DNA of 64,000 nucleotides, taken from contig CM074512.1 in the NCBI GenBank assembly GCA_037379345.1, positions 4,712,001-4,776,000 on the forward strand. The letters run 5' to 3'. The notes beneath the pieces were generated by a model. It was given only the letters and a program-made list of their open reading frames with translations. It was not told where the DNA came from and searched no databases. This document shows, one piece after another, positions 2,119 through 56,109 of this stretch (position 1 is the first letter of the stretch; each line of letters opens with the position of its first letter). A program made the position numbers and the translations under genes. This DNA comes from Perna viridis (lineage: Eukaryota).

Positions 2119-2137
2119 TATTTATATATATATATAT

Positions 2138-11295: not shown

Positions 11296-11379
11296 GGAAC
11301 AATTTACCCTCTAGCCACTCAGCGATCATTACTTACTACTTTCCTTAAAGAAATTTCAAGCATCACAAGATTACAACAG
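11296..11379 (+). CDS. SLC30A6: SLC30A6 exon (GTIYPLATQRSLLTTFLKEISSITRLQQ)
   Basis: tgtag|GGA ... CAG|gtaaag; resembles the ZnT6 N-terminus GTIH...QRS. Confidence 0.85.
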
Positions 11380-14300
11380 GTAAAGTTCACTAGTCACTAT
11401 GTAATTTGAATTCATTTTACGCCATCTACATTTTTATATCATCCGCCCTAAAAATTGCAATTCTTTATTATCATGAATTAAGTTTTGTTATTTTTGGACA
11501 GATAAGAGCAAACAAATTTGGGGTACCTACTTTTAAAATTGTGTCAAGTATGTACATGTACATGTGTAGATCATTGCTTTTTGGAAGACTACGGGGTCAA
11601 ATCACCAATTTCTAAATGTATCTCAAAAATTATAAGAGAAACTGGAAAATAAGCACTACAAAAGTCGCCATTTGATCACAGTTGTATGACTACTCCTTAT
11701 TGGAGATATTGCCCCTGGAAGGTCAAAACAAACAATTTACATGTATATGTTTTTGTTCTTAAAACTTGAAAACTGTAATTGATAGATAAAAACTTTTTGA
11801 AATAAAATGATAAAAAATTGTTAAAATGATCCTTTTTAGTAGGCCTACGAAAGTCTTCAAGTTCCAGGTTGTGTGACAACTCCTTAGTAGGGTTATTGCC
11901 CTTGAAAAACAAAAAATGACAATTTTTTAATGTTTAGCTTATAACTTGCATAACAAAATAGGTAGAAATAAACTTTTAATAGTTGAAATGATCCTTATAA
12001 TAAAGGCCTACTAAAGTTGCCAAAAGTTCTAGTTATATGAAGAACCTTTATTAGATATTGACCTTATACCCCCTTTTACCAGGTGAGTGATCAGCCTCTA
12101 GTTTTGTGTGGCTCAGGTGGCTAAATTTTGGCTGCAGCCCAAATGGCCATTGAAACCCTATCATGAAACTCATTTTTGGCATGAATCTTTGCTAACATTT
12201 AACCATTGCAGGAATGGTGTAATGAGGGACCCACATAAATGATTTACTTTCGTTTTTTTTTTATTTTTAATTTCTTGATTTATCCTCAAGTATGAAACAA
12301 AAGTTGTTTACAAATAAGGTTTGTATTGATATTTCTTTGTTCACTACAAAGAAAATAATAACATCAACTGAATTCTGGATAACTGTGAATTAATCCCTGA
12401 GGAAATTTACATAGGCAAGAATAATAATCTCATGATATAGTAAACATTGTCCTTGATAGTGTATCCTAGGATTTGTGTAAATTTTAGGAGAAAAATCAGA
12501 ATGAACAATGACTGCCAACTCAGTCATTGTCTTTAAGAATTTTTCTGGTATTTTAAGTTTTCAATTTGACATAGAAGTAAGTGGAGCATAATATATTGCT
12601 CGCTTATCAAAATTGGATTTTTTTAGGTATGGAATTCTAGAACACCAAAAAGTTTGAATTTATATAATGTGCAAATTGTTTTTAATACAACTGTATTGAT
12701 AAGTTCAATGAACTTCAAACTAACTATAAATTTCTTTCATAAAAGATGTAATGACATTTGTTGCCAATATTGTCATCTTCACAAAAAGGGTGGACCAAAT
12801 ACAAGACTAAGTGCACCATGCATCAAAGCATCCCTTTTCATTGCTGTTAAAAAATATTTCTTCCTTGTCACCTTAAGAACTTTACATACGGTTTTTATTC
12901 TCTATTTTCAGAGTAAGAAGATATTGATTTTCCTGGTGTTTAACATCATCAGTACATTTACATTGTTAGTATGGTGTCACTCAACAAACAGTATGGGTAA
13001 GTTATGGCACTAAATATTGATTTAAATAGTCAATATATATGTGTATGTTAAGAAATGGTTGTCAAATACTGATTTTTTATGTCCATGATGTTTTATCATT
13101 TGACTTCAATTATCTGAAGTTTTACTTTAAACTAATAATATAGGGTGTTAACATAAATAACTGTGAATATTGGCCTAAACAGATATCAAATTTCATGAAC
13201 ATGTGTGCAATATAGCATTGTTAGCACTAGTGCAAAGTTTTCTTTGGACACTGTTTATATGCAATGAACATGTATAATTGTTTTCTATTATTTCATTTTA
13301 TTCTTTTACCTGAAACATGATCAATAAATTTAGATTTTGTCCTGTAAACTATCAGATGATGTTCGTGTACTTCCTCAGTCAAAGATTGTAACTCTGCCCT
13401 GTAAACTATCAGATGATGTTCCTGTACTTCCTCAGTCGAAGATTGTAAATCTGCCCTGTAAACTGTCAGATGATGTTCCTGTACTTCCTCAGTCGAAGAT
13501 TGTAAATCTGCCCTGTAAACTGTCAGATGATGTTCCTGTACTTCCTCAGTCGAAGATTGTAACTCTGCCCTGTAAACTGTCAGATGATGTTCCTGTATTT
13601 CCTCAGTCGAAGATTGTAACTCTGCCCGTAAACTGTCAGATGATTTTCCTGTACTTCTTCAGTCGAAGATTGTAACTCTGCCCTGTAAACTGTCAGATGA
13701 TGTTCCTGTACTTCCTCAGTCGAAGATTGTAACTCTGCCCTGTAAACTCTCAGATGATGTTCCTGTACTTCCTCAGTCGAAGATTGTAACTCTGCCCTGT
13801 AAACTCTCAGATGATGTTCCTGTACTTCTCAGTCGAAGATTGTAACTCTGCCCTGTAAACTGTCAGATGATGTTCCTGTACTTCCTCAGTCAAAGATTGT
13901 AACTCTGCCCTGTAAACTATCAGATGATGTTCCTGTACTTCCTCAGTCAAAGATTTTAACTCCGCCCTGTAAACCATCAGATGAATCAATTTGCAGAATG
14001 TTCCTATACTTCCTCAGTCAGTTACAAACACTATGATAGAACATTGGAAGTTAAATGTACAGTTATTCAATCCTCATGGAAATAAATTGTTTCAAGTTCG
14101 ACAAAGTCTGATACCAGCCACTTGTACATCATGGTTAAGTCCCTTTTTGTACAGTTTATGGTTGCTTACATTTTCTGCTGATCTATAAAACCTTTACTTT
14201 GCTTTTATCAACTATTTAATTGACTTCAGTTCATTCTTTTTCTCGGGTTGGACTAATTCTGCTCTGCTCAAAAGATAGGCGATTCAACAGCCTGTTCCCA

Positions 14301-17300
14301 CATTTTATTTTATTTACAAAATGACAATATTGTATGCAAATATAAAAATCAACATTTGTTAAGAGTAAAGTAAAGTTCCCAGAATATATAAAAAGGTGAG
14401 AAACATAGAGTAAAATATTAGTGAATATTGCACTTTTTTTATTACTATATATAATAAAACTTTTTTTTGTTCTTTTTCAGCACTCACAGCTTATACATAT
14501 TTAACACTTTTTGATATATTCAGGTAACTATTTACAAATGTATATATAATGTTGATATCTCTCTACGCTAGTTAAGCTTGGGTTATTTGAGTCACAATGT
14601 AGCTACACACCAGCTCAATGAGTGGTAGTACATTGGAATCATTGTGTCTGTCCCTCCATCCAATTAGCAATTATCTCAGCTCTCAGTAGATAGATTAAAT
14701 ACATATTTGATATGTGGCTTTATACAGATGGGGCATATGTTGTAAGATATTTTGGTTGCTGTCTGATATCAACTTCCTGTACAAGTGGTGGTATGCCTAG
14801 CATGACAATATGTGCAACTTCAGGTTAAGATTTCTTGTCTGTCTAGTTCTATTTTAACAGATAGCACTTCCAAAAATCAGAATGTGGGACTTCTATATTC
14901 CAGGTATTTTGTTTTACATTGCAAGAAGATGTTGCTTGTTTTAAATTGGCCATCTTTTAATTTGTATTTTACATGAAATTTATTAATATTTTATTTGTAT
15001 TTTTCAGTCTAATGATTTGTCTGCTGAGTTTATGGGTTAAGATGCAAAAACCAACTCCAGTTTATTCTTTTGGGTGAGTTAAACCAGTTATGAAGGTAGT
15101 ATGTCCTCTCTTGTTCTATTTGGGTGAGTTAAACCAGTTGTGAAGGTAGTATGTCCTGTCTTGTTCTATTTGGGTGAGTTAAACCAGTTATGAAGGTAGT
15201 ATGACATCTCTTGTTCTATTTAGGTGAGTTAAACCAGTTATGAAGGTAGTATCTCCTCTCATTTTGGGTGAGTTAAACCAGTTATGGAGATAGTATGTCC
15301 TCTCTTGTTCAATTTGACATCATGATTCATATCCTATGGCACATCTTGGAAGGTAGTTATATCCTTCTCATCTTGGAAGGTAGTTATATCCTTCTCATCT
15401 TAGAAGGTAGTTATATCCTTCTCATCTTAGAAGGTAGTTATATCCTTCACATCTTATAAGGTAGTTATATCCTTCACATCTTGGAAGGTAGTTATATCCT
15501 TCTTTTGATTGATATTTTATTTTGCCTAATTTGGAGTATTCACACACTTGTGCTTTCCACAACTTTACATGTAAGAATATTATAAATTATATTGATGTGA
15601 TTAGAATATTTACAACATCCTCATTAGCTTTGCCTGTTATAGAAAATGGCATCTATCAGAACTCCCACCTCAGAAAAAATTTAAAATATTGTTTTCTTAT
15701 AATAAGAATACATGCATAGCATTTGTTTTTCAGGTACGAGAGATTTGAGGTGTTAGGAGTATTTGCTAGTACAATGTTAGCACAGCTTGGTTCTTTATTT
15801 ATATTAAAAGAAAGGTAAGTGATGGTTTATAGATGTGTATTTGGTTTAGCATAGAAAAAAAGAAAACTTATCTTTTGCTGAATTTCTATAGGAAAAAAAC
15901 GTGGTCCTATAGTGGCACTGTTATTGTCTGTGCAATCAACATCCATGTTATTGTTGTTGTCTATGGACTCTTGGTTTTTTATGCAATAATATGAAACTTG
16001 GTTGGTTACTGTGAAAGTATTTTTATTCATTGGTACCAGTTTGCATGGTTTAGGGAAAAATTATCCGTTCGTAGACTCTTAAATTCGTGGATTTGTCAAC
16101 TCCCATGAAAACCACGGAAATTGGTACCCCACAAACAATAATACTTTCACAATAATCTTGATAAAATTAAACAACAAGGTGTCTAACACACAAAGGGAAA
16201 GTTGGTACTGGTCTTGTTGGTTATGGTCCTAATAATTTTGGATCTCTATGATATTGTTCCATGATGTTCTATACCACAAAGGTCAGACTTGTATTGATTT
16301 TAGGTAGTAAGGACCTGAAGCATTTAGGAATTAGGGGCTGAAAGGAGCGATAAACAAGCATTTTTCTTGATTTTAAACAACAGCATGAGTAAAAGGGTAT
16401 GTTACTCAATGATATTGTACCATAAGGTCCAATACTACCAGATGGCAAGTTCATGATGATTAGGGGTTTTTAACAACCATGAATACCAATACTGGTCTCT
16501 CAGTGTTTTAATGGGTTTGTAGCGGAGCCCAGCCTTCCAGATAACTGACCAAAGAACTTGGTCTGAGTATGTCCTACTAGCAACTGGGCTGCTGTGTTGG
16601 CAAGTTCTGCACACATTTACTTACATGTATATATTACAATATCTAATATCCATGTTGATTTTACCTAGTTTATTTTCAAGACCAGATTTTATATAAACCT
16701 AACATAACCTTTAATCCATGTGTAAAAAGACACATTGTCACCACTTTGATATGAAATGTACCTATTATTTTGAATTTTTGGTACCTTATTTTCTAAACAG
16801 AACTCTATGAAAAAACATCTGTTTTCTTATATTTTTCTTTGATTGCAAGATACCCCCAAAATTTTATTGAAGTTTTTAAATGGCAAAAAATGGGGTTTTT
16901 TTGTTATTGCAGATATTGTTTCATGGTTTTTCTACCTTGTCACTTGGAATGACAAAATACTATGTCATACCTTCACATTTAATTATCAGGTGTTTGTCTC
17001 CATTGTTATTTCCTGACACATATCAAGCTCAATTTTCATCATAAGCTTTACTACTCCAGTTATGCTTGTTTATATAATTCCTTTTTCATTTTCACAATTA
17101 ATGTACATTTTTTATTTTAATTGCCCAACAAGGTAGCAGGTAATCATTTAATCTCTCCATACATGCCCTATTTTTTTCACATATTTATCTGGTATTTTAA
17201 CATATCGAGATGTAGTATAAGGAAAAATTACAAACAGTATAATTTGTTATACATTATGCTTTTTCAGTGTAGAGAGGATGTTTATACAACCTGATATACA

Positions 17301-20300
17301 TACGTAAGTATCTTAAATATAAAACACACAATTTAATGCTTTAAAATAATTCAACATATTGTTGCGTGGATAGCGCCTCCATTTCACTGGTTTCCTTCAA
17401 GCTTTAGTGAATTGTTAGTAACTGTAAAAGCTTAGATGGTATCGATTTTTCATAGAAACTGTCAAGGGGGACTACTTTTTTGGGATGGAAACTTAATGAA
17501 AACTTTTTAGGCATGACTTAGGCATGTTGCCCGGGTAGCGTCTCAATTTTTTTATGGATTTAATTCATACTTTGGTGAATGATTAGAGCCTCTTGTTCTT
17601 TCCCAGGTCCCATTTAATCCATAATTATTTCTTTAGTTATTTTTATGATACTGTGATAAATGGTATCTGCATAAAAATCAGTTGTCATGGTGCCCAGTAA
17701 AACATCTTACATGTATTAACATACATGACATTTGAAAGGATGTGATATTTGATAGTGTATACATGTCTGGTATTCAAAGATTTATATTATATACTAGTAA
17801 AGTATTATTGTTCTTGGGGTACCAAATTTTGTGATTTTCATGGGTTTGGAAAGCACAAAATTTAGTTCTTAACAAAAAGAAAATGTTCCATTCATTTGTA
17901 CGATAGAGTTGTCAAATCCACATATTCAAGAATCAACAAACTGATCATTTTCTCCTAAACCATGAACATTGGTACCCACGAATTAATGTACGTTTTGCTA
18001 GGGTTGTTGTTCATCCTTCAGAGGAGGACAGGTGATAAACCTCCAACTAGTTGGTTATTTATTTTCACTTAAGGATAAATATTCATACTAATTCTGCACT
18101 TTCCCACATTTTTTTTCTCATCCTCCAAATCCTGTCCCTCAGTTCATTTCTCTTCCTCCAAATCCACTTTCAAGCCACTTCTGTAATAATACTAAAATAA
18201 AATGCAAATACAACATAAAATTCTTTGTTTCAGTGGAAGGTTAATGATAGCAACAATTTCTGCTTTTTTTGCCCATTTTACTCTGACATATTGTATCAAT
18301 AACCAAGCAATGAACCATGTTGTTGAAGCATCTAGTTCCAGTTGGTTACAGGAACACATGACAGACATGTCAGAGAGGTAAGAGTCTAGTTCTCAGTGGT
18401 TTCATGAACACATGACAGACATATCAGAGAGGTAAGAGTCTTGTTCTTAGTGATTACAGGAACACATGACAGACATGTCAGAGAGGTAAGAGTCAAGTTC
18501 TCAGTGGTTACAGGAACACATGACAGACATGTCAGAGAGGTAAGAGTCTAGTTCTTAGTGATTACAGGAACACATGACAGACATGTCAGAGAGGTAAGAG
18601 TCAAGTTCTCAGTGGTTACAGGAACACATGACAGACATGTCAGAGAGGTAAGAGTCTAGTTCTTAGTGATTACAGGAACACATGACAGACATGTCAGAGA
18701 GGTAAGAGTCAAGTTCTCAGTGGTTACAGGAACACATGACAGACATGTCAGAGGGGTAAGAGTCTAGTTTTTAGTGATTACAGGAACTTACATAAAATCG
18801 GAGATGTTATGTTTGAATCCATCATCACAGTCATTGTCTTTGGACAAATACAAAAAAAGGAAGAACCAGCCAGTTGTTTTAAGACTGCATAAGATTTGTA
18901 GTCATATATTGGTATCATGTTATGGTCTTAGTAGATATTAAGTTAGATATATTTAAGGCTGTAACATCAGGTGCTATACTCCCAAAGGAAGTCTTTGATT
19001 GATTTTAGGGGTTGTGATGGGAACCATTTAAGAATTTGGACCTGAAGCAAGCATTTTCATGATTTCTGGAAATAGCTTGAGTGAAAGTAAATGATCTCTT
19101 ATAATGTAACACAAGATACCATGTCACCTTAGGTAAGCTAAGATTGATAGTAGAAATTTTCACAAGAATTAGGGACCTAAGGACTCAATTACAAGCATTT
19201 TTCTGATGATAATAACTTGAGTGTAAGAGTATGTATCCCTTTGAAATTGTAACACAAGGAGCTTTACTCCCAAAGGAAGGGTGGGATTGATTGTGGCTTG
19301 AACCATCCAGAAATTAGGGACAAAAAAGGGCCACTTGGATTTAAGTATGCCAAACATTTAATTGAATCCAATTTCAGGCTTGAATGGTCTCTCAGTACTT
19401 GCCCAGATTGTTAAGGATTCAACCTCTACAGTTGTATCAAGCTGTGCCTTGAGTAGCATGTTATTGATTATAGTCTTATTGAATAAAAATAGTGTCAACA
19501 CCTGCACATGCAGTACATGTGACTGTCAGGGAGCTATTTATTTCCAGATGGTTACAGCAATTTAGATAATGTAAGGTCCTTGTTTTATCAAATAGATATA
19601 TATATGAATTTCTGTGTAATTATATAACAAAATTAAAAAAAAGAATATGACAACTGTCAAAATCGTTGAGAAATAATTCTAGTAATGGCCAAATTTTACA
19701 ATAATGTGCTGTTATCAATATTTTTCTCGAACCTGTAAATCTTACTGGTCAGATTTCAATTGAAATTGGATATATATAGACTGTATACAAATATGACTTT
19801 TATTCCACAAAAATATACATATAATAGGATTTACATCATCAAATAAAAAGTACTATTATAACATGTCTTTATATACTACATCAAATACCGTAAAGGGGGT
19901 AATTTTTGCAGGGTGCTAATTTTTTTATGTTTTAGTGGTAATTTTAAAAACACCAAAAATAAAATTTGTAAAATATTTACTCTTTGATTTAGTACTCAGT
20001 ACACACAGTATCTACCAAAATATTTTGTAATCCTTTTGCCTCAAAATTGCCTTCTGTTTTTAGCTCACTTGGCCATAGGCCAGGTGAGTTATAGCCATCA
20101 CTTGGCGTCCGTTGTTGTCGTTAACAATTTTTTAACTCTTCTCCTCTGACTCTACTTGACCAATTTGAACCAAACTTGGTATGAATGTTCCTATAAATTG
20201 TAAAACATGGCCACTATTAGTAAAAATAGAATATAGGGATCTGAGAGTAGTTTTTCGCATACATCTCCAAAACCGTTAGGTTTAGCCAAATTCTGATGAG

Positions 20301-23300
20301 GTAAAAGTGTATAGCATGATGAGATCTATCTGTGGTCAAATTTTCATTTTAACCTGTTCAGCCATGTTGGAGTTATTACCCTTTTTTGACATTTTTTTGC
20401 TATTTTTAATGTTATTTCTTTCAAAAATGTTCTCCTCTCACCCTGTTTTACCAATTGGAACTAAACTTGGTATGAATGTTCCTTTGGGTATCCTACATAG
20501 AAATGGTATGGAGATTTTTGATCCGTTGAAAAACATGGCCGCTGTTACTAAAAATAGAACATAGGGGTCAGACATTAGTTTATCACATATATCTCCAAAA
20601 CCATTAAGTTAGCCAAATTCTTTCAATTTCTGAAATGATCCTTATTATAAGGCCTTCAAAAGTCTTACGGTGACTCTTTGTTAGAATTATTGCACTTGAA
20701 AGATGAAAAATGATTTTTTTTCTTACAGTTTTCAGCCAGTATCTTGAAAACTAATAGAGAGAAAGAAACTTTCAATCACTGAAATGATCCTTATGATAAG
20801 TCCTACCAAAGTCTTCTGAGTCATAATTGTTGGACAACTCCTTGTTAAATTTATTTCTTGTTGAAGACAAATTTTAACCAGGTGAGCGATTCAGGCTCCT
20901 GGGAGCCTCTTGTTTTTGTGGGCATTCCAGTTTTGTTTTGTTTTTTTTTTTTGTTGTTGACTTTGTTTTCTTTTTAGTGTTTGCCACATATTGCCAGGAC
21001 TAAGTAAGCTGTTGTTACCAAGGATCAATCCAATGGCTCTCATTGGGTTCTCTGGAGGAATTGCACTGGTTATTACATACATATTGATAGACACAAAGTA
21101 TGTTTTGATATTATCAGCTTATAAAAAGATGTAAGATAGTGAATGCATTAGAGTATATAGGTACATAATGGAGGACAATTCTATGTTCAATAAACCCCCT
21201 GCAAACTAAGTTTCAGGGTATATAAGATTATCCTGTCTGGCTGTCCATTTGTCTCTCAATATTTCTTGTAAGTACAATTTCTCCTAAACCAGGCAGAAGT
21301 TTTGATGACTTTATAGGAAGGATGGGCATCATATGCAGATAGATATGCATGAAAGATAATCAAAATTCAGGGTTTTACATTAGCGGAACTCCTCTTAACT
21401 GTTAAAGGGGTTTTGATGACTATTAATAGGAAGGTTCGGCATCATATGGAGATATGCAATGAGGAATTATTGTGGGCAGACAAAAGAGGAAAAGAAAACT
21501 ATGACATGTTGAACAAATCAGTTTTCATGGTGCAGATGGCTACACCATAACGATCCACAAGTTCATGATAACCATGAGACTTCTATAGTGATCTTGTAGC
21601 AACATGAAATTGTTCCAGAAGCCTAGCACAATACAAAAAGTCTATGACAAGTCAATTCAGTGGTTTTACATTCTACATTTAACTCCATTGAAGTGGTCTT
21701 TTTTTTTTTTTTTTTTTTTTGAACTCTCTCACAGTATTTCTAAATATCATCGCTGATGCAGATACCCTATATTTTTTTTTCAGTTTGTCAATCCATCTAT
21801 CAATCCATCAACAATTTGTCTGTCCTTCTGTCAATTCATTTGTCAATCTTTCAACAATTTGTCCATCAATCTGTCAATAATTTTTCTATCCATCTGTTAA
21901 TCCATCATCAATTTGTCCATCCAAATGTCAATCCGACAACAATTTGTCCATCCATCTTTCAATCTGTTGACAATTTTCCTGAGTGCAAAATATCATAAGT
22001 TATTGCTGAACAGTAACAGTGTCACTTTATTAATTACCATATGAATTTATACATCTTTAGTTTTTAGTCAAGTTTTGATAATTAGTTTGTAGAACTTTCT
22101 ATTCTCATAAAAAAATACAATTTTAGAACTAAATTTTTTTTACATTAATTGACAACCATTTTGGCAGAAAGTATGTTTTTTACAAAAAGATAAAAAGATA
22201 TGAATTATAAGTTGAACTTAAGTTCAAAGTGGTAAATGATATTTTATATACTCTTCGAGACAGGACCCTTTCTGACTTTTGATGAACTCTGTAAAGATAG
22301 TACCAAGTTGTCTCTCATGATGTGTTCAATTAATTGAACTGTTCACTCATATTTTTTTTTCAATATCTTAATAAGACAAGGCAGAACTCCTAGAAGTCTT
22401 TTGTATACATTGGTTGTCAATGCTATACTCCAGAATTTTGACATCTTGGTTGTCTTCTTATTTATGAGGAGGGTGGTAATATCATAGCTGGTGATTTTGT
22501 AAGGTTCAATTCTTCCTTTGAGTTCTTAGCTACCACTCATTTCATAGAAAAAAGAACAGATATGGTGAAACGTAATGAATACATCATTGTATGAAAATAG
22601 TAAATACAGAGATCACCAAAAGGTCTTCAATAAGTGTAAATACACTTTCAAGTAAGCTCTGAAAGGCCCTGACAACAATAGTAATAAAATCCATGGTAAC
22701 AGAATGATGACACTCATTCAAAATAAAAAGTAAAATAACAACGCAGACACATTACTGACTAAAATTAGCATTAGGGTGAAATCATTAATTTCTAACCAAG
22801 TATCATGCTGCAAGCACAGCAGACAACTTGGAAATAGTGGACAAACATCTGAAGTGGACAAAATTAGATTAAGGCAACAAAACACCAAAAACATGCTTCA
22901 TTCATAAATTATTTGTTGAAAATTTTGAATTTGATCTTGAACTTGATATCAAAAAGCAATGAATCAAGCAATAATAAACAACACAGGGCAAAAAATTACA
23001 TAACTGAAATGAATATTTTGGTGAATGTACTAACAGGATAACACAACATTTCCTGATTATAGAGAAAATTGAGTTCAAAATGTCTTTGATCAGTGATGTT
23101 CATTTCAGGGAGAAGTGACTGATGTTTAAGAATGTCCTAGTTGGATTCAAAGGTGTCCAGATTGATGCAAAGCTGCTCTGTCTTCATTACTCTCCTTTCC
23201 TTGTCAATTGTCTCCAAGCATCTGTCTGTTTGCCTTCTTTCTGCTTTATCCTCTGTTGATTGTGAGAGAGGGTTTAATAGGTATAGTTTGATCAAGACCA

Positions 23301-26300
23301 GTCCCAGAAATAGGTTGAAGATTTCTTTTGTCAACACTCTTCTAAAGAATTGTTTTCAACATTCTAGCCTGAAGTATTATAACTTTAAAATGAAGAAATG
23401 AACTGATTGTCTCCAAAAGATCTTTAGAACTTTTCAGGATCCACATTGAACTAATACCACTACAGGAGTAACAAGTGTTGTGGTACGACTGCAGACCCTC
23501 TTTCACAGCTGTTAGTATAGAAGTTAAAAGTTTTGAAAGAGGTTTGGTGGTACATTTTGCAGATCCAGCTATGTAATGTTGTTTGTATGGATTAGACGGT
23601 AAATCACAATCATCGTCCGTGGTAGAGAGACCAAAAGAGGATGGCACAGATTTATGGCTTTTCACAACCTCTTCTTTGAAGAGTATGGTAGCAGTATACA
23701 TGTAGGTCTTATCACTGCTATTATTTTCTGTTTCTGCCTCTGATAATAAATATTGGATGTAAAACGCTTTGCAGACAAAAACAATGTTGTTTTGAGCTTT
23801 GTCTGCTGGTACCACAACATACTTGTCATGTATAGTAGACGATGTTTCTGCTACATCAGGGTCTTTGAAAACTGATGTAGAATTGGTACTCATTGACCTA
23901 CTTAAAACTTTCATTCGTTTCAAAATTAAGTAAAGACCTCACAGCCTTCAACCACTCCGACAGCGAATCAATGTCTTCTTGTTCTATAATTCCAATTTAT
24001 GGAGCGAGATTCACAGTACTTGGGACCTTTAGAAAGGATATTACACAGAGATTCGTTTTCAATGATGGATAAATCTCCTGTAATGATGTGACTGAAGGAC
24101 CATATTTCAATGGAGAGTTTTTGCAAGAACAGTCAGGTGGTTTAGCTTTGAAGTCCTCAATCTCAAGGTTCTGCAATAGCCTTTTATAATTGAAAATTTT
24201 GGATGCAATGGGTGAAGTAAAGGAATGTAAAATGATTGGTATGGAATTGTCTTTGAAATAAGGGGGGGATTTGTTGGTAGCGTTTTTGTGATGGAGGATG
24301 TTAGCCAAATTAATTGCATCTATACCTTTGTTGACAAACAGTAGTGTAAGAACTGATCGTTTTTCTTCATCTTGACTTTTCACACAAACTGGTTTAAAGA
24401 GTCCATGGAAACCAATATCCAAAATGATGGCAACAAGTCTGTATAATGATGAGGTAGGGTCAGAAACAGGAGTGTCAAGACTTGTTTTGTAAAGGGAGTG
24501 TAGTAGAATGTGAGGTATAGAATAGAGTTTTGTTCGAATGTGATGAAGTCCAAGAGGTTTTTGTATGAAAGGAAGGAGACCATCTATGGAGACATCATGT
24601 AACTTAGGTGAAGTATAGTGGCGATGGCCATGACTCCTTTTCCATCTTGGAAATTTTGTCCAAAAAATTCATCACATTTATCCTATTGTTATATTGGTTT
24701 GAAAGGTCTCCTATACTTTTGATGTTGTCAGTGCATCCGTAGGGTATTGCACTACCTAGTCTGCGTATCCAGTTCTCCTCTCTTTCCAAACGATAGTTTT
24801 TACTAAGAACGGGACTGTTCGTAGGATGGTCACTTTTTTCTAAAATACAACCTTTCATAGAGAGGATTGAATGATCTTTTGATTAAAATGTTGATAAACT
24901 GTTGGGAATTTAGTGGTATTTATTCCCGAATGAAGACCGCACGTTCTTTTGTTTAAACTAAGTCATTCAAATGGCAATAGAGAAAGAATATCCTTTGAAA
25001 AGTTGTCATGTTCATAAGCAGGGATTTAGCCAGAATTTTTTTTAACAAAAACAATACAATAAAACATATCATCACAAGTTGTTTCTTAGCTACTATTAAA
25101 CATCAGTCTCAAAATACCTACTATTAAATGTCTGCACCAACACTTGTAAATTATTTAAAATGAAACAATTCCAAAAAAGATGTTTACAAAATGCTGGAAT
25201 TTTTTATCGACAACATATTTGTCCAGTGTGGTGGACGCATTTTTCAACAAAGGGTCGGCATTCCAATGGGAACAAATTGTGCTCCTCTACTTGCTGACCT
25301 ATTCCTTCACTCGTATGAGGCTGACTTTATTGCTTATCTGATCCAAAAGAAAGAATATCATTTAACTAGATCCTTTAATCTCAGTTTCCACTATATAGAT
25401 GATGTATTATCTTTAAACAATCCTAATTTTTGGGATTTGATACATCACATCTACTCCAAAGAACTTGAGGTAAAGGATACTAAAGACACTGTGAAGTCAG
25501 CCTCATATTTTGACCTACACCAAGAAGTCGATGGTAAAGGAAAACTATTGACCAAAGTTTACGACAAACGTGATGACTTTTCATTCAGAATTGTCAATTT
25601 TCCTTTCATCTGTGGCAACATCCCTTCAGCACCTGCATATAGAGTATTCATATCACAACTCATATGTTATGCCAGAGCTTGCCAAAACTACGCAGACTTT
25701 TTGTATTGTGCTAGAATTCTAACAAATAGGCTTCAGGAACAGGGTTATGTTGCTACAAGATTGAAGTCATCACTACAGAAGTTTTATTGCGTCATCATGA
25801 ACTCATGGATCGTTATGGTATATCCATCTGCACCATGAAAACTGATTTGTTCAGCATGTCATAGTTTTCCTTTCCTCTTTCGTCTACCCCGGACTTGACT
25901 TTTTATGAGCAACTTGGCGAGAGTTTCTAGAAAAGCAGAGAAAGCTTACCCTACTGGTGCACCTGGTCCATGCTCCCAGTTTTTAGTGAGTCTGAGTTGC
26001 TCATTTGCTTTTGTTGCTTTGTGTGTATGATTTTAGTTACTTTGTACTCTCTTTTTGTGTATGTCTGTTTTCCATGTCTTTGTCCCTGGATTACATTCTT
26101 TTGATTACCGCTATAACCTTTGTTTCCTTGATTACTCTTTAGAAATAATCTCAAATAAATCATAAAAGAAAAAGATTTTAAAATGTGTGAATATTGAATA
26201 TTGCTAATATTATTATTATTATTTTTTTTTAGACATTTTAACAAAAATAGTTAATGAGCCATATTGATTATTTTGTTATAGGATAATTAATTGGAAAAAG

Positions 26301-29300
26301 GGACCAACTAAAATTTGATCACAAGAATGCCAAAACAAAACAAGTGTGCTGAACTTGTTCTATGCACAAGACAAGCCCAAGCATTCTTGGCAAAAGGATT
26401 CACATTTTGATTATTCATTATGGTCAACTGATTTATTTAATATAATTTTCAATAATTTACTGTTATTTTCAAATGATTTTTTTCCTTTTCAGCAGATTGA
26501 TATTCCAAATCATCTGTCACATTAATGTCTGAACTTTAATATCGATAGCCATTAAAGTAAATACATTATTATTTTTTCTATTGGTAGATTGTATCATTCA
26601 GCAGATACCTGGGCTGCAGTATCAATAGCCATTATGACTTGTGGAACTATGTTCCCATTGAGTTCCTATACAGGCAAAATACTTTTACAGGTTAGTATTC
26701 ACTCATGGATGTCACTAAAAGAAAGGAGGAATCTGTGATGAAAGGAAAGTGCATGTCTCTCATATTTCGGATGTGTATGAGTGTTTGTTGCATACAGACA
26801 ATATTAACCAGTGTAACAAAGTCATATATTTATTGGTAATATATAGCTGATTAATTTCTACATATAAATTCTAAGCTAAGTGCTCTACAGGCTCTGTATA
26901 TTCAGTGATAATATATAAAATTTTTGTCTCATTTTTCTTGGCTACTGTTAAAGACAGGTTGCTGATATATTGTATAAGCTTCCTACAAGGGTGTTGTATT
27001 GTGGGTAGGTTTTCATTCTTGTGCGACATCTACTTCCTGTTTAATGAAAAACAAAACCATGAACATTTCTTATATAGTGATGGAAAGCAAGTTTTCACCA
27101 GTGAGCCATCTCTCACATATGTATTGTTTTGACCTTAAATGCATGGAATATTTGCCTAAGTGAAATCACAAGCAATATTTTTGGTTTATATAGTTTTATA
27201 TTCCATTAAAAATGTCATGAATTATTGATTCACAAGGCAGGCAAATTAGTATTTTGTCTTACTTAGTCTAACACACAACTTCATCTTTTAAAAAGGCTAC
27301 AACAAATGTGAATATATTTTTTTTGGATCAAAGAGCACTTATCTATAAAAGAGTTAAGAAGAATGTTTAAGCCCCCACTCAAATTTATATTATACACCTA
27401 TGTACCTATACAATTATTTGCCCAAGGAGTATTTATTCCTATATGTATACCTATTGTCAATAATATTTGAAAACCTGTTCTGTCCATGTGGATTCAAATA
27501 GCAAAGCTTAGAAATGTACCGGTTCTCTTTTTTTAGGCAATCAATAACCTCTGGAAGCCATTGAGAATTATCTTAACATCCCCTTAAAAACTTCAGAAGA
27601 CAATAAAATTTAAGATATTGTAAACCAATATATTTTTTAGCATTCTTATTTCAGGTTTCAGGATATCAGTTCAACTTTGCTACTATTTATTTTTGCAGCT
27701 AACACTCTGTTTAACATGTATTTCATAACTAAGGAACTTTATTTACAGCAATTTTATTTCATGATGTTTTCAAAATTAGTAGAAATAAGTTGGTTTACAA
27801 TAATGAAATAATCCTAAAGACTTAAGTACTAATGTGGGTAAAGTTATAAAACTTTTGGTCATATGATTACTAGCATGATAAGTTGTCTTGATGCATTTGT
27901 ATCTTATGGGAAGCAATGCTGGCTACTTGCAATCCTATCTTGACAGCCATAACCAATGAAATGATGTTTTAGTGAAACTTAAATTTTCCAGGTTTACCAG
28001 GCCCAATAGCCCAGTACTTACTGCTTTTACATTCTTCACAAGAAACTAAAGTGATAACTTGATTTTCAGACTACACCGTCTCATTTACTGAGTCAGTTAG
28101 ACAAAGTTCTACGTGAAGCATCTACATTAGATGGTGTATTGGAATTCAGACATGAACATTTCTGGACCTTGTCATTTGGCATACTTGTAAGTACTGACAC
28201 ATTTGGCATACTTGTAAGTACTGACACATTTGTGTTATTTGATGGTCAAATTTGTTGATAAAACTAAGTGTTTTATTATAGGATATGGAGAAGTATAGAC
28301 CAAAAGAGCAACCATTTTAAATAGATAGATACTTTGACCATTGTCTGTGCAATATTTTGCAGATTCTTTTCAAGTTTGTATATGTTGTTTCATGTGACAG
28401 AAATGAGGGTCAAGTTTGATTTTAGCAAATATCATTTATGTTTGATTCCGAATAGCAGTCGTTTTTGTTACGACTGTTGTGGTGTTTTAGTTTTACATAA
28501 GATATCAAACTTTGTGCAGTTATCAAGTATCATAAATTCAGTTAAGTAGTAATTTCAGTTTGCTGGGATTATTCACTCAAAAAATGACAACCATTCTATG
28601 TTGTTTTTACCCCCAATATTTTTAGATGAGTTGAAGTTAATTTTCTTTGAATATTTAGGAAATGTGTGAGTTAGTTCTTCTGGATATTAGGCAGCAACTG
28701 TTAGATTTTTTATGGGCTATGGATTTTTTTTCTGAGACAAACTTTTTTTTAACCATGAGCAGAAATAACTTGTAATTTTTTCCAGGGCCAATCAAAAAAA
28801 AATTTTTTTCACCATCTGTTGAAAATAATCTTTTTTTTTGTCATTTCACTATTGCCTAGCATCTTTAACATAGCCACTATGCTTTATTTTTTTTTGTCAA
28901 TTTTTTAAAACAAACTTTTTTTCTCTCTAATGATATGTCAAACTATTTTTTACCACATTTTCCAAAAAAAATTCCATAGCCCCCTTCCCAGGAAATTAAA
29001 TGGTTGCTGCCTTATGGCATCAATTTTCAATTTCAGTCTATACCACCACCACCCCCCCAAAACAAAACAAAACAACTATGATAAATTAGAGTTATCTTTC
29101 TTGGAATGTATAAGGGAACATTTTTGGTGACTCATTAACCACTTCCAATGTTTCCAATATTTTACATGTTAAAAGTAATTTTCAAAAATATCACTGTGCA
29201 TTCCCTGGACAAATGACGCCCTAAAATTGTACACCAATGCAAATCAAGGAAGTATTGCTCAGTTAACTATATTTTAATATAGCCTAGTAGCCTAGTTGGC

Positions 29301-30240
29301 CAAGTGGTCTACAGCGTTGGATTTAGTGCAGGCGGTGTTGTCAGAGAAGAGAAGGGGTTCAAATCCTGCAAATTTGCAACCTTGCATCAATTCTGAAGTT
29401 GGAATTTAGCTTAGACTTGATCATAGGTTGAGTTGCCACATCCCTTTAGACTTCTTACTTATATGTGCACATATACAATTGTAAGGCACACCAATATTCC
29501 TCTCTTACATGGGAAATATTGCAACATTTTTTTGTAGGTTTAGAACCATCATAAGAAACATTTTAAAAAAATCACATATTAATGTTCATGAAAAAGGTGT
29601 ATAAAATTATCATATGTTTAACTTAACATGTTTTCTGTAGGATTCCTTAAATGGAAGGCATATGTTTACAGATGGTATTTGGAAGAACATGTTTTATGTT
29701 TTTTTTGTGGATAAGATCACTAGTTTCCATGCTGTTCCTGAGCTTTTGTTTACATACAAATTAAACAAGAATGCTATGATTTGTGAACACTCACTTATAT
29801 TTTTTCTAAAAAAGTCTAGCTATCGATAATAAAAATTCAGTTTAATTGTACTGTATATTTACTGATGAATTTTGTAGGCCGGATCAGTTCAAGTTCGTGT
29901 ACGTCGTGACGCTGATGAACAAATGGTATTGGCACATGTATACAGTCGCCTGTCCAATATGGTTAGCACACTGACAATTCAGATATTTAAAGATGATTGG
30001 ACAAGAGCATCAGGATTTAGTGTTCTTGGCAATCCAGCTTTTACATCTACTTTTTCTGGTGGGCAACGTGGTCCATCACCTATTCTTGATCCTGGATCCC
30101 AAGGTCACAGGTTTGAAGGTCATGGTCATAGTCATGGGCATGGACATAGTCATGGACATGGACATAGTCATGGAATGTCAGAATTTAAGACTTCTACTCC
30201 TTTAAAAGGGGGAGTAAGTTACTTTCCTCCAAAGTCTTAA
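11296..30240 (+). CDS. SLC30A6: Zinc transporter 6 (CDF family), spliced CDS join(11296-11379,12912-12996,14481-14523,15008-15073,15734-15814,17268-17303,18234-18377,20978-21097,26588-26690,28070-28186,29878-30240); 5' end incomplete
   Basis: All 11 exons have AG/GT boundaries with compatible phases (1242 nt in total). Translation: GTIYPL...VWCHSTNSMALTAYTYLTLFDIFSLMICLLSLWVKMQKPTPVYSFGYERFEVLGVFASTMLAQLGSLFILKESVERMFIQPDIHTGRL...SSSWLQEHMTDMSES...LLQTTPSHLLSQLDKVLREASTLDGVLEFRHEHFWTLSFGILAGSVQVRVRRDADEQMVLAHV...LTIQIFKDDW. This is collinear with vertebrate ZnT6 as I recall it. Confidence 0.95.
11470..12103 (+). mobile_element. HINE-like element remnant (3' portion)
   Basis: Ends TTTTACCAGGTGAGTGATCAGCCTCTAGTT; internal repeats resemble 20620-20880. 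Confidence 0.5.
12912..12996 (+). CDS. SLC30A6: SLC30A6 exon (TM1, SKKILIFLVFNIISTFTLLVWCHSTNSM)
   Basis: ttttcag| ... G|gtaagt; WCxSTNS motif. Confidence 0.93.
13337..13984. repeat. Minisatellite, 57-bp unit, ~11 copies (intronic)
   Basis: Unit CTGCCCTGTAAACTGTCAGATGATGTTCCTGTACTTCCTCAGTCGAAGATTGTAACT, highly homogeneous. Confidence 0.95.
14481..14523 (+). CDS. SLC30A6: SLC30A6 exon (TM2, ALTAYTYLTLFDIFS)
   Basis: tttttcag| ... AG|gtaact. Confidence 0.93.
15008..15073 (+). CDS. SLC30A6: SLC30A6 exon (LMICLLSLWVKMQKPTPVYSFG)
   Basis: ttttcag| ... GG|gtgagt; CDF signature YSFG. Confidence 0.93.
15061..15316 (+). repeat. 50-bp tandem repeat x5 that includes the exon end and splice donor
   Basis: Unit TGG|GTGAGTTAAACCAGTTATGAAGGTAGTATGTCCTCTCTTGTTCTATT. 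Confidence 0.95.
15342..15503. repeat. 27-bp tandem repeat x6
   Basis: Unit CATCTTGGAAGGTAGTTATATCCTTCT. Confidence 0.95.
15734..15814 (+). CDS. SLC30A6: SLC30A6 exon (YERFEVLGVFASTMLAQLGSLFILKES)
   Basis: ttttcag| ... AG|gtaagt. Confidence 0.95.
16009..16152. mobile_element. Small TA-flanked MITE; a related copy lies inverted at ~17793-17995
   Basis: TA-CTGTGAAAGTATT ... AATACTTTCACAA-TA terminal inverted repeat; internal GGTACC motifs shared with the second copy. Confidence 0.6.
17268..17303 (+). CDS. SLC30A6: SLC30A6 exon (VERMFIQPDIHT)
   Basis: ttttcag| ... AC|gtaagt; 36 nt. Confidence 0.9.
18234..18377 (+). CDS. SLC30A6: SLC30A6 exon (GRLMIAT...EASSSSWLQEHMTDMSES)
   Basis: gtttcag| ... 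AG|gtaaga; ZnT6-specific SWLQEH motif. Confidence 0.93.
18331..18788 (+). repeat. 54-bp tandem repeat x8.5 comprising the last 47 nt of an exon plus the donor GTAAGAG
   Basis: Unit TCTAGTTCYYAGTGRTTACAGGAACACATGACAGACATGTCAGAGAG|GTAAGAG; alternating A/B variants. Confidence 0.97.
20058..20913 (+). mobile_element. Complete non-autonomous Helentron-like element (HINE)
   Basis: 5' TTTTAGCTCACTTGGCC..AGGTGAG, GTC/GTT microsatellite, internal tandem repeats, 3' subTIR AGGTGAGC followed by hairpin AGGCTCC-TG-GGAGCCT; sits in T-rich flanks. Confidence 0.75.
20978..21097 (+). CDS. SLC30A6: SLC30A6 exon (VCHILPGLSKLLLPRINPMALIGFSGGIALVITYILIDT)
   Basis: tttttag| ... AA|gtatgt. Confidence 0.92.
21475..21625 (-). 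mobile_element. Naiad-type PLE fragment (RT C-terminus)
   Basis: Reverse complement matches 25730-25885 (CATGAACTTGTGGATCGTTATGGTG..CATCTGCACCATGAAAAC). Confidence 0.7.
21780..21975. repeat. Degenerate TCCATC/TGTCAATC low-complexity repeat
   Basis: Recurrent TCCATC, TGTCAA and ACAATTTG units. Confidence 0.7.
23060..23390 (+). pseudogene. hAT transposase relic (C-terminal dimerisation domain, ZNF862-like)
   Basis: LSSVDCERGFNRYSLIKTSPRNRLKISFVNTLL matches the hATC motif SSxxCERxFS...KTxxRNRL. Confidence 0.7.
23400..24955 (-). mobile_element. Naiad-type Penelope-like element, 5' part: GIY-YIG endonuclease C-half, CxC linker, RT N-terminus
   Basis: In order on the minus strand: ILEK...RLEREENWIRRLGSAIPYGCTD (EN), KPPDCSC (CxC), HDKYVVVPADKAQNNIVFVCK, YIAGSAKCTTKPLSKLLT...MWILK (RT); frameshifted. 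Confidence 0.85.
25180..26140 (+). mobile_element. Naiad-type PLE, 3' part: RT motifs B-E, thumb and 3' non-coding region
   Basis: QQRVGIPMGTNCAPLLADLFL, FHYIDDV, YDKRDDFSFRIVNFPF; no endonuclease follows the RT. Confidence 0.9.
26588..26690 (+). CDS. SLC30A6: SLC30A6 exon (LYHSADTWAAVSIAIMTCGTMFPLSSYTGKILLQ)
   Basis: ggtag| ... CAG|gttagt. Confidence 0.92.
28070..28186 (+). CDS. SLC30A6: SLC30A6 exon (TTPSHLLSQLDKVLREASTLDGVLEFRHEHFWTLSFGIL)
   Basis: ttttcag| ... CTT|gtaagt; a second identical donor follows 28213. Confidence 0.95.
28173..28232 (+). repeat. 27-bp perfect tandem duplication spanning a splice donor
   Basis: CATTTGGCATACTT|GTAAGTACTGACA twice, plus CATTTG. Confidence 0.97.
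29281..29450 (+). mobile_element. tRNA-derived SINE-like element
   Basis: A box TGGCCAAGTGG and B box GGTTCAAATCC; the body CAAATTTGCAACCT..TTAGACTTGAT is shared with 37458-37545 and 37818-37905. Confidence 0.65.
29878..30240 (+). CDS. SLC30A6: SLC30A6 probable last coding exon with His-rich tail
   Basis: ttgtag|GCC; AGSVQVRVRRDADEQMVLAHV...FKDDW...GHGHSHGHGHSHGHGHSHG...TAA; AATAAA at 30276-30281. Confidence 0.9.
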   Translation, partial: AGSVQVRVRRDADEQMVLAHVYSRLSNMVSTLTIQIFKDDWTRASGFSVLGNPAFTSTFSGGQRGPSPILDPGSQGHRFEGHGHSHGHGHSHGHGHSHGMSEFKTSTPLKGGVSYFPPKS

Positions 30241-56064: not shown

Positions 56065-56109
56065 ATTTAAAGTTAACCTGTAGGGTTTCGAGATAAAGAT
56101 TTTTGATGT

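What the first reader, a model, noticed from the sequence alone, without database searches (positions are those of the whole stretch)
15061..28232. Three 5' splice sites of one gene are each tandemly amplified (donor-anchored repeats)
Seen: 3 of the 10 internal donors of the reconstructed SLC30A6 CDS lie inside tandem repeats whose first unit is the real exon end plus donor: 50 bp x5 (15061-15316), 54 bp x8.5 (18331-18788) and 27 bp x2 (28173-28232). The three units are unrelated in sequence, so these are independent events. All three extend into the intron, and no acceptor carries an equivalent clean array. Inference: either a mutational process is focused on exon/donor junctions, or selection tolerates or uses arrays of competing U1 sites. 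At the two phase-2 introns the first donor itself supplies an in-frame stop (GG|G-TGA, AG|G-TAA), so any distal donor yields a premature-stop transcript. Copy number could therefore act as a VNTR-tuned splicing/NMD rheostat.
Basis: partly seen in the sequence, partly recalled or inferred. Interest (0 to 1): 0.8.

Follow-up and report, generated by a model that had tools for sequence, protein, structure and literature searches.

The report
Repeated splice donors in ZnT6 gene
Three introns of a mollusc zinc-transporter gene begin with tandem copies of the exon end plus its splice signal, a kind of repeat already known from lancelets ('mirages') and a few human genes; the new points are that one gene carries three and that one of these junctions was amplified independently in two other species.

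Summary
The window holds a ZnT6/SLC30A6-like gene of a mollusc; it is not human. Homology fixes eleven coding exons and ten donors. Three donors (15073|15074, 18377|18378, 28186|28187) are the first unit of tandem arrays: 50 bp x5, 54 bp x8.5 and 27 bp x2.2. The units are unrelated and all 12 downstream pseudo-donors are intact. Random placement gives P about 2e-4, post hoc.

This kind of repeat is known: 'mirage' minisatellites in amphioxus (Adh3, globins, TnC, PGBD5) and human F7, IFI6, CBS, LMNB2 and PDGFA. In those genes the first donor, or the first two or three, is used.

The three introns are ancient, and the arrays are absent from the nearest relative available. Two arrays show 6-nt microhomology at the unit junction. 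The in-frame stop is generic: five of six phase-2 donors have it. Site 3's second donor adds 27 nt in frame. Acceptor-side duplications exist in relatives.

The unexpected result is that the exon-f donor (site 2) also carries independent arrays in two of seven other species (136 bp x16; 19-28 bp x5), against 0 of 49 other donors (P=0.014).

Best reading: slippage-born, tolerated junction minisatellites. The NMD-rheostat idea is untested.

The parts
11296..11379 (+). Coding exon '1p' (begins GTIYPLATQRS...). It starts at an acceptor, so the ATG lies in a further upstream exon that was not located. Donor CAG|GTAAAG, phase 0, no array.
   Evidence: tblastn with the Littorina and other N-termini and tblastx against L005; sequence; phases.
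12912..12996 (+). Exon a; donor TGG|GTAAGT, phase 1, no array.
14481..14523 (+). Exon b; donor CAG|GTAACT, phase 2, stop immediately after the donor, no array.
15008..15073 (+). Exon c (TM2 region, ends ...KPTPVYSF-G); its donor TGG|GTGAGT at 15074 is the authentic donor of site 1, phase 2.
15061..15316 (+). Site 1 array: 50 bp x about 5. Unit 1 is the last ~13 nt of exon c plus the donor. Pseudo-donors at 15124, 15174, 15224 (TAG|GTGAGT, closer to consensus than the real one) and 15268. The array ends with TGTTCAATTTG, just short of another donor.
   Evidence: TRF; sequence; unit dissection.
15342..15503 (+). 27 bp x6 sub-array derived from the 3' half of the site 1 unit (shares GAAGGTAGT...). 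Each unit has a weak donor-like AAG|GTAGTT.
   Evidence: TRF; it gives the highest inter-unit alignment score, with the site 1 unit.
15734..15814 (+). Exon d; donor AAG|GTAAGT, phase 2, immediate stop, no array.
17268..17303 (+). Exon e; donor TAC|GTAAGT, phase 2, immediate stop, no array.
18234..18377 (+). Exon f (ends ...SSSSWLQEHMTDMSE); its donor GAG|GTAAGA at 18378 is the authentic donor of site 2, phase 2.
18331..18787 (+). Site 2 array: 54 bp x8.5. The unit is 47 nt of exon end plus 7 nt of intron. There are seven pseudo-donors (18432 to 18756). Units 3-8 alternate two subtypes (108-bp higher-order repeat). All copies share a change absent from the exon (SQW against SSW), so they descend from one copy that had already diverged.
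   Evidence: TRF; register listing.
20978..21097 (+). Exon g; donor AAA|GTATGT, phase 2, no immediate stop, no array. A (GTTTT)n/T-rich microsatellite sits in its acceptor tract (20930-20974).
26588..26690 (+). Exon h; donor CAG|GTTAGT, phase 0, no array.
28070..28186 (+). Exon i (ends ...HFWTLSFGIL); its donor CTT|GTAAGT at 28187 is the authentic donor of site 3, phase 0.
28173..28232 (+). Site 3 array: 27 bp x2.2, 100% identical. The unit is 14 nt of exon plus 13 nt of intron, flanked by the 6-nt direct repeat CATTTG (a slippage signature). Using the second donor at 28214 would add 27 nt in frame (9 codons, no stop).
29878..30240 (+). Last exon j, with the conserved C-terminal domain and a His-rich tail encoded by a hexanucleotide repeat (30118-30174), then the stop.

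Best explanation
These are junction-spanning minisatellites, called 'mirages' in amphioxus. A short tandem duplication whose 5' breakpoint fell in the exon end and whose 3' breakpoint fell a few to ~40 nt into the intron copied the exon end plus the 5' splice site. Replication slippage or another microhomology-mediated event is the likely start, followed by unequal exchange that expanded the array. This happened three separate times in one ZnT6-like gene of a mollusc whose genome is very rich in minisatellites. The gene still works because only the first copy is attached to the rest of the exon, and the spliceosome uses the most upstream of a series of equivalent donors. The other copies are then just the start of an old intron. 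Any leak to a downstream donor gives an immediate stop at sites 1 and 2, probably removed by NMD, and a 9-residue in-frame insertion at site 3. Shown here: the arrays, their anchoring on real donors, their independence, the age of the introns, the youth of the arrays and the microhomology. Inferred from precedent and not tested here: use of the first donor, NMD of leak products and copy-number instability.
For: The arrays and their exon anchoring. The units are unrelated and not dispersed. The introns at all three sites are shared with Littorina, Owenia and four unnamed assemblies, so the arrays are secondary to old introns. The closest relative available (L005/L004/L001) has the same ten exons a-j but no array at any of the three donors. 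Microhomology: CATTTG flanks the site 3 unit, and AGTTGG occurs both in the exon and at intron +4..+9 of the independent 136-bp array in L009. Expansion by unequal exchange: the A/B higher-order structure at site 2 and the derived 27-mer sub-array at site 1. High background: arrays cover 9% of the window. Precedent: amphioxus mirages at both boundaries that do not disturb splicing and vary in copy number between haplotypes (PMC3087553, PMC3902484); human F7 IVS7, where identical pseudo-donors stay silent because the most upstream site is selected, and IFI6/CBS, where the first two or three donors are used (PMC1557585).
Against: Neutral birth plus tolerance does not predict an excess at donors. 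Three anchored arrays among ten donors is nominally P about 2e-4 within the window, and 3/10 against 2/56 in other species gives P=0.02. The exon-f donor is hit independently in 3 of 8 species while 0 of 49 other donors in the non-window species are hit (P=0.014). Even weighting by exon length this stays near P=0.03-0.04 (my own estimate), which hints at a junction-specific bias. All 12 pseudo-donors in the window and all 15 in L009 are intact, although the tests for avoidance of variation are weak (P=0.03, 0.36, 0.10). No RNA data exist here to show which donors are used.
Confidence: 0.6

Rival explanations
1. Junction hotspot. A mutational process makes particular exon/5' splice-site junctions, above all the exon-f donor of ZnT6, unusually prone to tandem duplication. 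Candidate causes are local direct repeats in conserved coding sequence (serine-codon repeats, ACATGACAG/ACATGTCAG), purine-rich or G-run sequence at the donor, or transcription- or splicing-coupled DNA damage. The arrays would still be functionally neutral.
For: The exon-f donor is array-anchored independently in the window (54 bp x8.5), in L009 (136 bp x16, absent from its near relative L005) and in Owenia (19-28 bp x5), with different breakpoints. That is 2/7 against 0/49 other donors outside the window, P=0.014. There is a nominal excess within the window. The exon-f end contains an internal 9-mer direct repeat and an 8-nt palindrome, and folds slightly better than shuffles (z=-2.0 as DNA, z=-2.8 for the array as RNA). 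The Owenia array is rich in G-runs.
Against: The sample is small and the pattern was noticed after the fact. Exon f is the longest internal exon, so it offers the largest target for exon-side breakpoints. Four species with very similar exon-f ends have no array. Sites 1 and 3 show no recurrence (0 of 5 and 0 of 8). No known mechanism ties duplication to 5' splice sites.
Confidence: 0.2
2. Functional decoy-donor array. The repeated 5' splice sites bind U1 and divert a copy-number-dependent fraction of transcripts to premature-stop isoforms, or enhance use of the first donor, so the array acts as a heritable tuner of ZnT6 output.
For: All pseudo-donors are intact, and one at site 1 is closer to consensus than the real donor. 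The GT hexamer is invariant in all 27 copies across three arrays, with weak depletion of variable columns. Distal-donor use at sites 1 and 2 gives an immediate stop. The same junction recurs across lineages. In humans, tandem-repeat length is widely associated with splicing variation (PMC10078293), and IFI6 and CBS do use their first two or three repeated donors (PMC1557585).
Against: The immediate stop is generic to phase-2 GT[AG]AGT donors: five of six in this gene, three of them without arrays. The arrays are not conserved in the nearest relative. In Owenia the pseudo-donors have decayed. Site 3 gives an in-frame insertion, not a stop. In F7 the identical pseudo-sites are silent and do not compete (PMC1557585), and amphioxus mirages do not give aberrant mRNAs (PMC3087553, PMC3902484). 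Intact pseudo-donors are also what young arrays would show.
Confidence: 0.1
3. Assembly artefact: the arrays, or their copy numbers, come from mis-assembly of a heterozygous, repeat-rich genome.
For: Site 3 is a perfect 27-bp duplication that could also be a heterozygous indel. Lancelet PGBD5 assemblies disagree on copy number (PMC3902484). No reads are available here.
Against: Sites 1 and 2 have diverged units with ordered substructure (85% and 92% match, A/B alternation, shared derived changes), which collapse or expansion errors do not produce. The same kind of array is found in independent assemblies of other species. In lancelet, re-sequencing confirmed such repeats (PMC3902484).
Confidence: 0.03
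4. Intron gain or exonisation in progress: the introns were created by tandem duplication of an AGGT-containing exon segment, or the copies are becoming new exons.
For: This model exists for other genes (PMC3265369, PMC4974935) and was proposed for mirages (PMC3087553). Site 2 pseudo-units have acquired a YAG motif (TCTCAG/TCTTAG) 12 nt after each pseudo-donor.
Against: All three intron positions and phases are shared across molluscs and an annelid. The introns are 0.66-2.6 kb and the arrays fill only their first 46-430 nt. The unit lengths of 50 and 54 with stops in frame would not give a usable exon.
Confidence: 0.02

Closest known systems
Amphioxus 'mirage' minisatellites (Adh3, globins BflGb6/BflGb9, troponin C, PGBD5; Canestro et al. 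2002 as cited in PMC3087553 and PMC3902484)
   Same: They are tandem repeats whose boundary unit is a real exon end plus splice site. Unit sizes run from 10 to about 160 bp. One gene can hold several (PGBD5 has a 60-bp and a 108-bp array, each abutting a 5' splice site). Copies keep the AG/GT signals. The boundary unit is excluded from homogenisation, as at window site 2.
   Different: In the library searched they are reported only from cephalochordates, whereas here they are in a mollusc, other mollusc-like assemblies and an annelid. Here three donors in one gene are involved, and the same orthologous junction recurs in different lineages, which has not been described for mirages. Normal splicing and copy-number instability were shown for mirages but could not be tested here.
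Human F7 intron 7 37-bp VNTR (PMC1557585)
   Same: The first monomer spans the exon-intron boundary (4 nt exon + 33 nt intron), and 4-8 identical pseudo-donors follow the real one. This is the mechanistic model for why such arrays are tolerated: the most upstream donor is selected and the functional pseudo-sites stay silent.
   Different: It is a vertebrate gene with a single array. Window site 2 and the L009 array are mostly exon-derived (47 of 54 and ~127 of 136 nt), not mostly intronic. No splicing assays exist for the present gene.
Human IFI6 (6-16) and CBS intron 13 minisatellites (as summarised in PMC1557585)
   Same: Repeated donors follow an exon end, and the first two or three donors are actually used, giving alternative products. 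That is the outcome to expect if window site 3's in-frame second donor is used.
   Different: Those repeats give in-frame or known isoforms. At window sites 1 and 2 any distal donor gives an immediate stop.
Intron gain by tandem duplication of an AGGT-containing segment (PMC3265369, PMC4974935)
   Same: A tandem duplication copies a splice signal at an exon boundary.
   Different: That process creates a new intron between the copies. Here the introns are ancient and the arrays are later additions at their 5' ends.
Tandem repeats associated with splicing variation in humans (spl-TRs, PMC10078293)
   Different: Most spl-TRs act through RNA-binding-protein motifs or spacing, not through reiterated donors. 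No association data exist for this gene.

Membership tests
ZnT6 / SLC30A6 (cation diffusion facilitator, Pfam Cation_efflux) | Sequence similarity to named ZnT6 proteins along the whole coding region | tested here: met
   An exon-j query hits 196 proteins, 79 of them at E<=1e-10. Sources name them 'zinc transporter 6(-like)' in Mya, Littorina, insects, fish and urchins. tblastn of these proteins maps ten window exons in order.
ZnT6 / SLC30A6 (cation diffusion facilitator, Pfam Cation_efflux) | Pfam Cation_efflux domain | tested here: inconclusive
   Single window exons are too short to score. Full-length relatives score above the cut-off, e.g. 121.9, 90.2 and 38.8 bits. The joined window CDS was deliberately not searched.
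Junction-spanning ('mirage') minisatellite | Head-to-tail tandem repeat of 10-200 bp units | tested here: met
   TRF periods 50, 54 and 27 with 5.2, 8.5 and 2.2 copies.
Junction-spanning ('mirage') minisatellite | The boundary unit is the genuine exon end plus its splice site | tested here: met
   Homology ends at 15073, 18377 and 28186 and resumes in the next exon. The unit registers are shown.
Junction-spanning ('mirage') minisatellite | Repeat copies carry the splice signal | tested here: met
   12 of 12 pseudo-donors keep GT and the +3..+6 positions.
Junction-spanning ('mirage') minisatellite | Regular splicing is not disturbed (only the authentic site, or the first few sites, are used) | not testable with these tools
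   No transcript data for this species. The word search found no same-species sequences.
Junction-spanning ('mirage') minisatellite | Copy-number instability between haplotypes or individuals | not testable with these tools
   Only one assembly of this locus is available.
Intron created by tandem duplication | The intron is absent from relatives that lack the duplication | tested here: not met
   The same intron positions and phases occur in Littorina, Owenia and unnamed assemblies without arrays.
Copy-number-tuned splicing/NMD regulator | Distal donors are used, the products are NMD-sensitive, and output scales with copy number | not testable with these tools
   Only the reading-frame consequences could be computed, and the stop is generic to phase-2 donors.
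Copy-number-tuned splicing/NMD regulator | The array is maintained by selection across related species | tested here: not met
   All three arrays are absent from the closest relative available. The arrays at the exon-f donor in other species have different units and breakpoints.

The most novel reading that the evidence does not exclude
Amplification of exon-end-plus-donor units is not random. Particular junctions, here the exon-f donor of ZnT6, are amplified again and again in independent lophotrochozoan lineages (54 bp x8.5, 136 bp x16, 19-28 bp x5). The cause would be either a splice-junction-linked mutational mechanism or a benefit from arrays of decoy U1 sites, such as copy-number-dependent tuning of productive splicing against NMD.
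Probability: 0.2. Interest if true: 0.75.

Novelty: new member of a known kind. Interest (0 to 1): 0.42.

Why it matters
Junction-spanning minisatellites place many identical, functional-looking 5' splice sites in a row, so they are natural experiments on how the spliceosome chooses a donor. Until now they have been treated as a lancelet curiosity plus a handful of human cases. Finding three in one mollusc gene, a 16-copy example in another mollusc-like genome and a decayed one in an annelid suggests they are widespread in repeat-rich invertebrate genomes. There they will also mislead gene predictors by offering spurious exons and wrong donors. The recurrence at one orthologous junction, if it holds up, would make a long-standing question directly testable: are such arrays merely tolerated, or generated or kept preferentially at splice sites? 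If it does not hold up, this is an ordinary by-product of a high tandem-duplication rate.

Tried and rejected
- Pfam on single exons gave nothing useful, so family assignment rests on full-length relatives and on the names sources give.
- The word search with the last exon found no same-species or same-genus protein; the best match was 73-76% identical over the conserved part. Polymorphism, sister-species comparison and transcript evidence were therefore out of reach.
- The Mya arenaria locus is not on record.
- The original mirage paper (PMC117041) is not held. It is cited only through PMC3087553 and PMC3902484.
- A search for such repeats in molluscs found no paper. One literature query failed on syntax.
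- Dispersed-repeat or transposon origin was rejected: the units have no copies outside their own arrays in the window.
- Displaced exon-fragment copies elsewhere in the window: none.
- A hairpin or RNA structure that could drive slippage or mask pseudo-donors: site 1 has none, site 2 has a small hairpin that does not cover the donor, and at site 3 only the two copies pair with each other. This is not decisive.
- Selection on pseudo-donors, tested by counting variable alignment columns, was weak or absent.
- Intron gain by duplication was rejected because the introns are conserved.
- Other multi-exon genes in the window for an internal control: none recognisable. There are only transposon fragments and a single-exon bZIP gene.

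Full report
WHAT THE WINDOW IS. The window is AT-rich (about 32% G+C), has no N, and is crowded with minisatellites. Arrays with period of at least 15 cover about 9% of it. Single exons were too short to score in Pfam. I therefore sent one conserved exon piece by reference (window:29878-30027) to the representative search. It returned 196 relatives. Those with names are 'zinc transporter 6(-like)' from the bivalve Mya arenaria, the gastropod Littorina saxatilis, the annelid Owenia fusiformis, insects, fish and sea urchins. Full-length relatives carry Pfam Cation_efflux. The closest named protein is from Mya, so the window is from a mollusc, probably a bivalve. I take neither the window nor any fetched locus to be human. 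The unnamed loci match molluscs best, or in two cases are ambiguous invertebrates. I never joined them into a spliced sequence for a search or a fold. Only lengths and phases were added up.

THE GENE MODEL. Local tblastn of Mya, Owenia and other ZnT6 proteins against the window maps ten exons, a to j, between 12.9 and 30.2 kb. An eleventh coding exon at 11296-11379 matches the Littorina and vertebrate N-termini. It begins at an acceptor, so the ATG lies in a further exon that I did not find. With exact splice sites the model has ten donors and closes in frame over 1242 nt, or 414 codons. Six consecutive introns, b to g, are in phase 2.

THE OBSERVATION.
- Exon c ends at 15073. Its donor TGG|GTGAGT, together with the last ~13 nt of the exon, is unit 1 of a 50-bp array with four more intact donors. 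One of them, TAG|GTGAGT, is closer to consensus than the real donor. A 27-bp x6 sub-array derived from the 3' half of the unit follows.
- Exon f ends at 18377. The 54-bp unit is 47 nt of exon plus GTAAGAG, and seven more GTAAGA donors follow. Units 3-8 alternate two subtypes. All copies share a change that the exon lacks, so the array grew from one copy that had already diverged.
- Exon i ends at 28186. A perfect 27-bp duplication (14 nt exon, 13 nt intron) is flanked by the 6-nt direct repeat CATTTG.
The three units are unrelated and have no other copies in the window. No exon fragment occurs elsewhere in the window. No acceptor lies in an array.

CHANCE. Placing the gene's five arrays at random gives P=0.03 for three covering a donor, and P=2e-4 for three starting in the last 50 nt of an exon. 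From the window-wide density of array starts, P is about 1.8e-4 for ten donors. These are post-hoc figures for a window picked because it looked odd. By my own rough estimate, a genome with this many minisatellites should contain a few such genes by chance.

- The in-frame stop supplied by the first donor is not a property of the array sites. Five of the six phase-2 donors (b, c, d, e, f) read G|TAA or G|TGA, three of them without arrays. It follows from GT[AG]AGT in phase 2.
- At site 3, which is phase 0, the second donor would add 27 nt in frame with no stop.

THIS KIND OF REPEAT IS ALREADY KNOWN. Borensztajn et al. (PMC1557585) list human genes with a minisatellite whose first monomer spans an exon-intron boundary: F7, IFI6 (6-16), CBS, LMNB2 and PDGFA. 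For F7 they show that the identical downstream donors are functional but silent, because the most upstream one is selected. IFI6 and CBS use the first two or three donors. In amphioxus such repeats are named 'mirages'. They occur in Adh3, globins, troponin C and PGBD5, at both 5' and 3' boundaries. They differ in copy number between haplotypes and do not disturb splicing (PMC3087553, PMC3902484). Lancelet PGBD5 has two arrays in one gene, each abutting a 5' splice site. I found no report from molluscs or annelids in the library.

COMPARISON WITH RELATIVES. No same-genus sequence exists in the collections. I fetched orthologous loci from Littorina (L002), Owenia (L003) and six unnamed assemblies, walking along contigs where needed.
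- The intron positions and phases at all three sites are shared across these species. The introns are therefore old and the arrays are later additions, which rules out intron gain by duplication.
- The closest relative (L005/L004/L001) has the same ten exons a-j but no array at any of the three donors. The window's arrays are lineage-specific.
- Acceptor-side events exist. Owenia has an 89 bp x2 duplication of the intron end, an intact acceptor and the first ~33 nt of exon h. L001 has a 162 bp x2.9 intronic array of decayed copies of the acceptor plus exon-i start, in which the AG has changed to AA. Donor-only anchoring is therefore not a rule.

THE UNEXPECTED RESULT. The donor of exon f (site 2) is array-anchored in two further species.
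- In L009/L007 the real exon f, with its acceptor, is followed by 15 more copies. The period is 136 and the array spans about 2.2 kb. Each copy holds the last ~127 nt of the exon plus 9 nt of intron, and each has a perfect or near-perfect AAG|GTAAGT donor. The unit junction lies on a 6-nt direct repeat, AGTTGG, present both in the exon and at intron +4..+9. Its near relative L005, about 96% identical in exon f, has no array, so this amplification is recent and independent of the window's.
- In Owenia the same donor is followed by about five degenerate 19-28-bp units whose donors have decayed.
A uniform scan of all loci gives, outside the window, 2 of 7 exon-f donors anchored against 0 of 49 other donors (Fisher P=0.014). 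The window's 3 of 10 against 2 of 56 elsewhere gives P=0.02. Exon f is the longest internal exon and so the largest target. With that weighting I estimate P at about 0.03-0.04. This is suggestive but not established.

MECHANISM. My best reading has three steps.
- Birth by slippage or microhomology-mediated tandem duplication. This is shown by the CATTTG and AGTTGG repeats.
- Growth by unequal exchange. This is shown by the higher-order structure and the derived sub-array.
- Tolerance, because only the first copy is joined to the rest of the exon and the first donor is chosen. This is inferred from F7 and from mirages.
Leak products would be stopped at once at sites 1 and 2. Tests for selection on the decoy donors are weak. 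The GT hexamer is invariant in all copies, but depletion of variable columns is P=0.03 in L009, where the whole 3' half of the unit is invariant, and P=0.36 and 0.10 in the window. Folding shows nothing that would mask the pseudo-donors.

VERDICT. What is new is modest: the first such arrays I can find described outside chordates, three of them in one gene, and a hint that one junction is a recurrent target. Interest is 0.42. The novelty class is 'new member of a known kind'.

Noticed in passing
L009:13947-16123 (minus strand; same contig as L007:1-375): In an unnamed mollusc-like assembly (ENA ERZ25073814) the real exon f of the ZnT6 ortholog is followed by 15 tandem copies (period 136) of its last ~127 nt plus an intact AAG|GTAAGT donor. 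The unit junction lies on a 6-nt AGTTGG direct repeat. The array is absent from the near relative L005.
   Followed up: yes
L003:11107-11211 (Owenia fusiformis): The donor homologous to window site 2 is followed by about five degenerate 19-28-bp G-run-rich units. The first unit is the real donor and the later ones have lost GTGAGT.
   Followed up: yes
L003:12228-12408 (Owenia fusiformis): An 89 bp x2.0 tandem duplication of the intron end, an intact acceptor (tttctcag) and the first ~33 nt of exon h. This is an acceptor-anchored counterpart of the finding.
   Followed up: partly
L001:3923-4392: A 162 bp x2.9 intronic array, about 4 kb upstream of exon i, whose units are decayed copies of the acceptor plus exon-i start (AG changed to AA) joined to a donor-like flank. 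The same interspersed element follows both the array and the real exon i.
   Followed up: partly
L005:4238-4422: A 37 bp x5 array starts about 25 nt after the exon-a donor in the closest relative. It is donor-proximal but does not include the donor.
   Followed up: partly
window 18385-18787: All site 2 pseudo-units carry a derived TCTCAG or TCTTAG (an acceptor-like YAG after pyrimidines) 12 nt downstream of each pseudo-donor, where the exon has TCCAGT. Each unit therefore holds both a donor and an acceptor-like motif.
   Followed up: no
window 13341-13984 and 10259-11043: There are two further large minisatellites in or near the gene. One is 57 bp x11 in intron a-b, open in frames on both strands. 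The other is 48 bp x16, ending about 250 bp upstream of the exon at 11296. Neither resembles an exon or junction.
   Followed up: partly
window 30118-30174 (also L006:10345-10490): The last exon encodes a His-rich tail (HGHSHG repeats) through a hexanucleotide/18-mer coding repeat. Similar CATGGACATAGT-type repeats occur in the same place in related assemblies. This could be a metal-binding tail; I do not recall one in vertebrate ZnT6 (from memory).
   Followed up: partly
window 14523-21097: Six consecutive introns (after exons b to g) are all in phase 2. Owenia lacks the d/e intron (exons d and e are fused, L003:10603-10719).
   Followed up: no
window 20930-20974: A (GTTTT)n/T-run microsatellite forms the polypyrimidine tract directly upstream of the exon-g acceptor.
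   Followed up: no
window 56107-57132 (+): A 342-codon open frame with a C-terminal bZIP_2 domain (Pfam E=2e-15), apparently a single-exon bZIP transcription factor gene downstream of ZnT6.
   Followed up: partly
window 25164-25835 (+), 31426-31947 (-), 40506-41175 (+), 53235-53573 (+); also 1776-3387: There are four decayed copies of one reverse-transcriptase-like element family (shared motif NCAPLLADLFLHSYEADFIA; weak Pfam RVT_1), one of them inside intron g-h. Other retroelement-like open frames lie near the window start.
   Followed up: partly
window, upstream of 11296: The exon that carries the start codon was not found. The exon at 11296 begins at an acceptor with no ATG in front, although in vertebrate proteins the Met directly precedes the homologous GTI motif.
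   Followed up: partly
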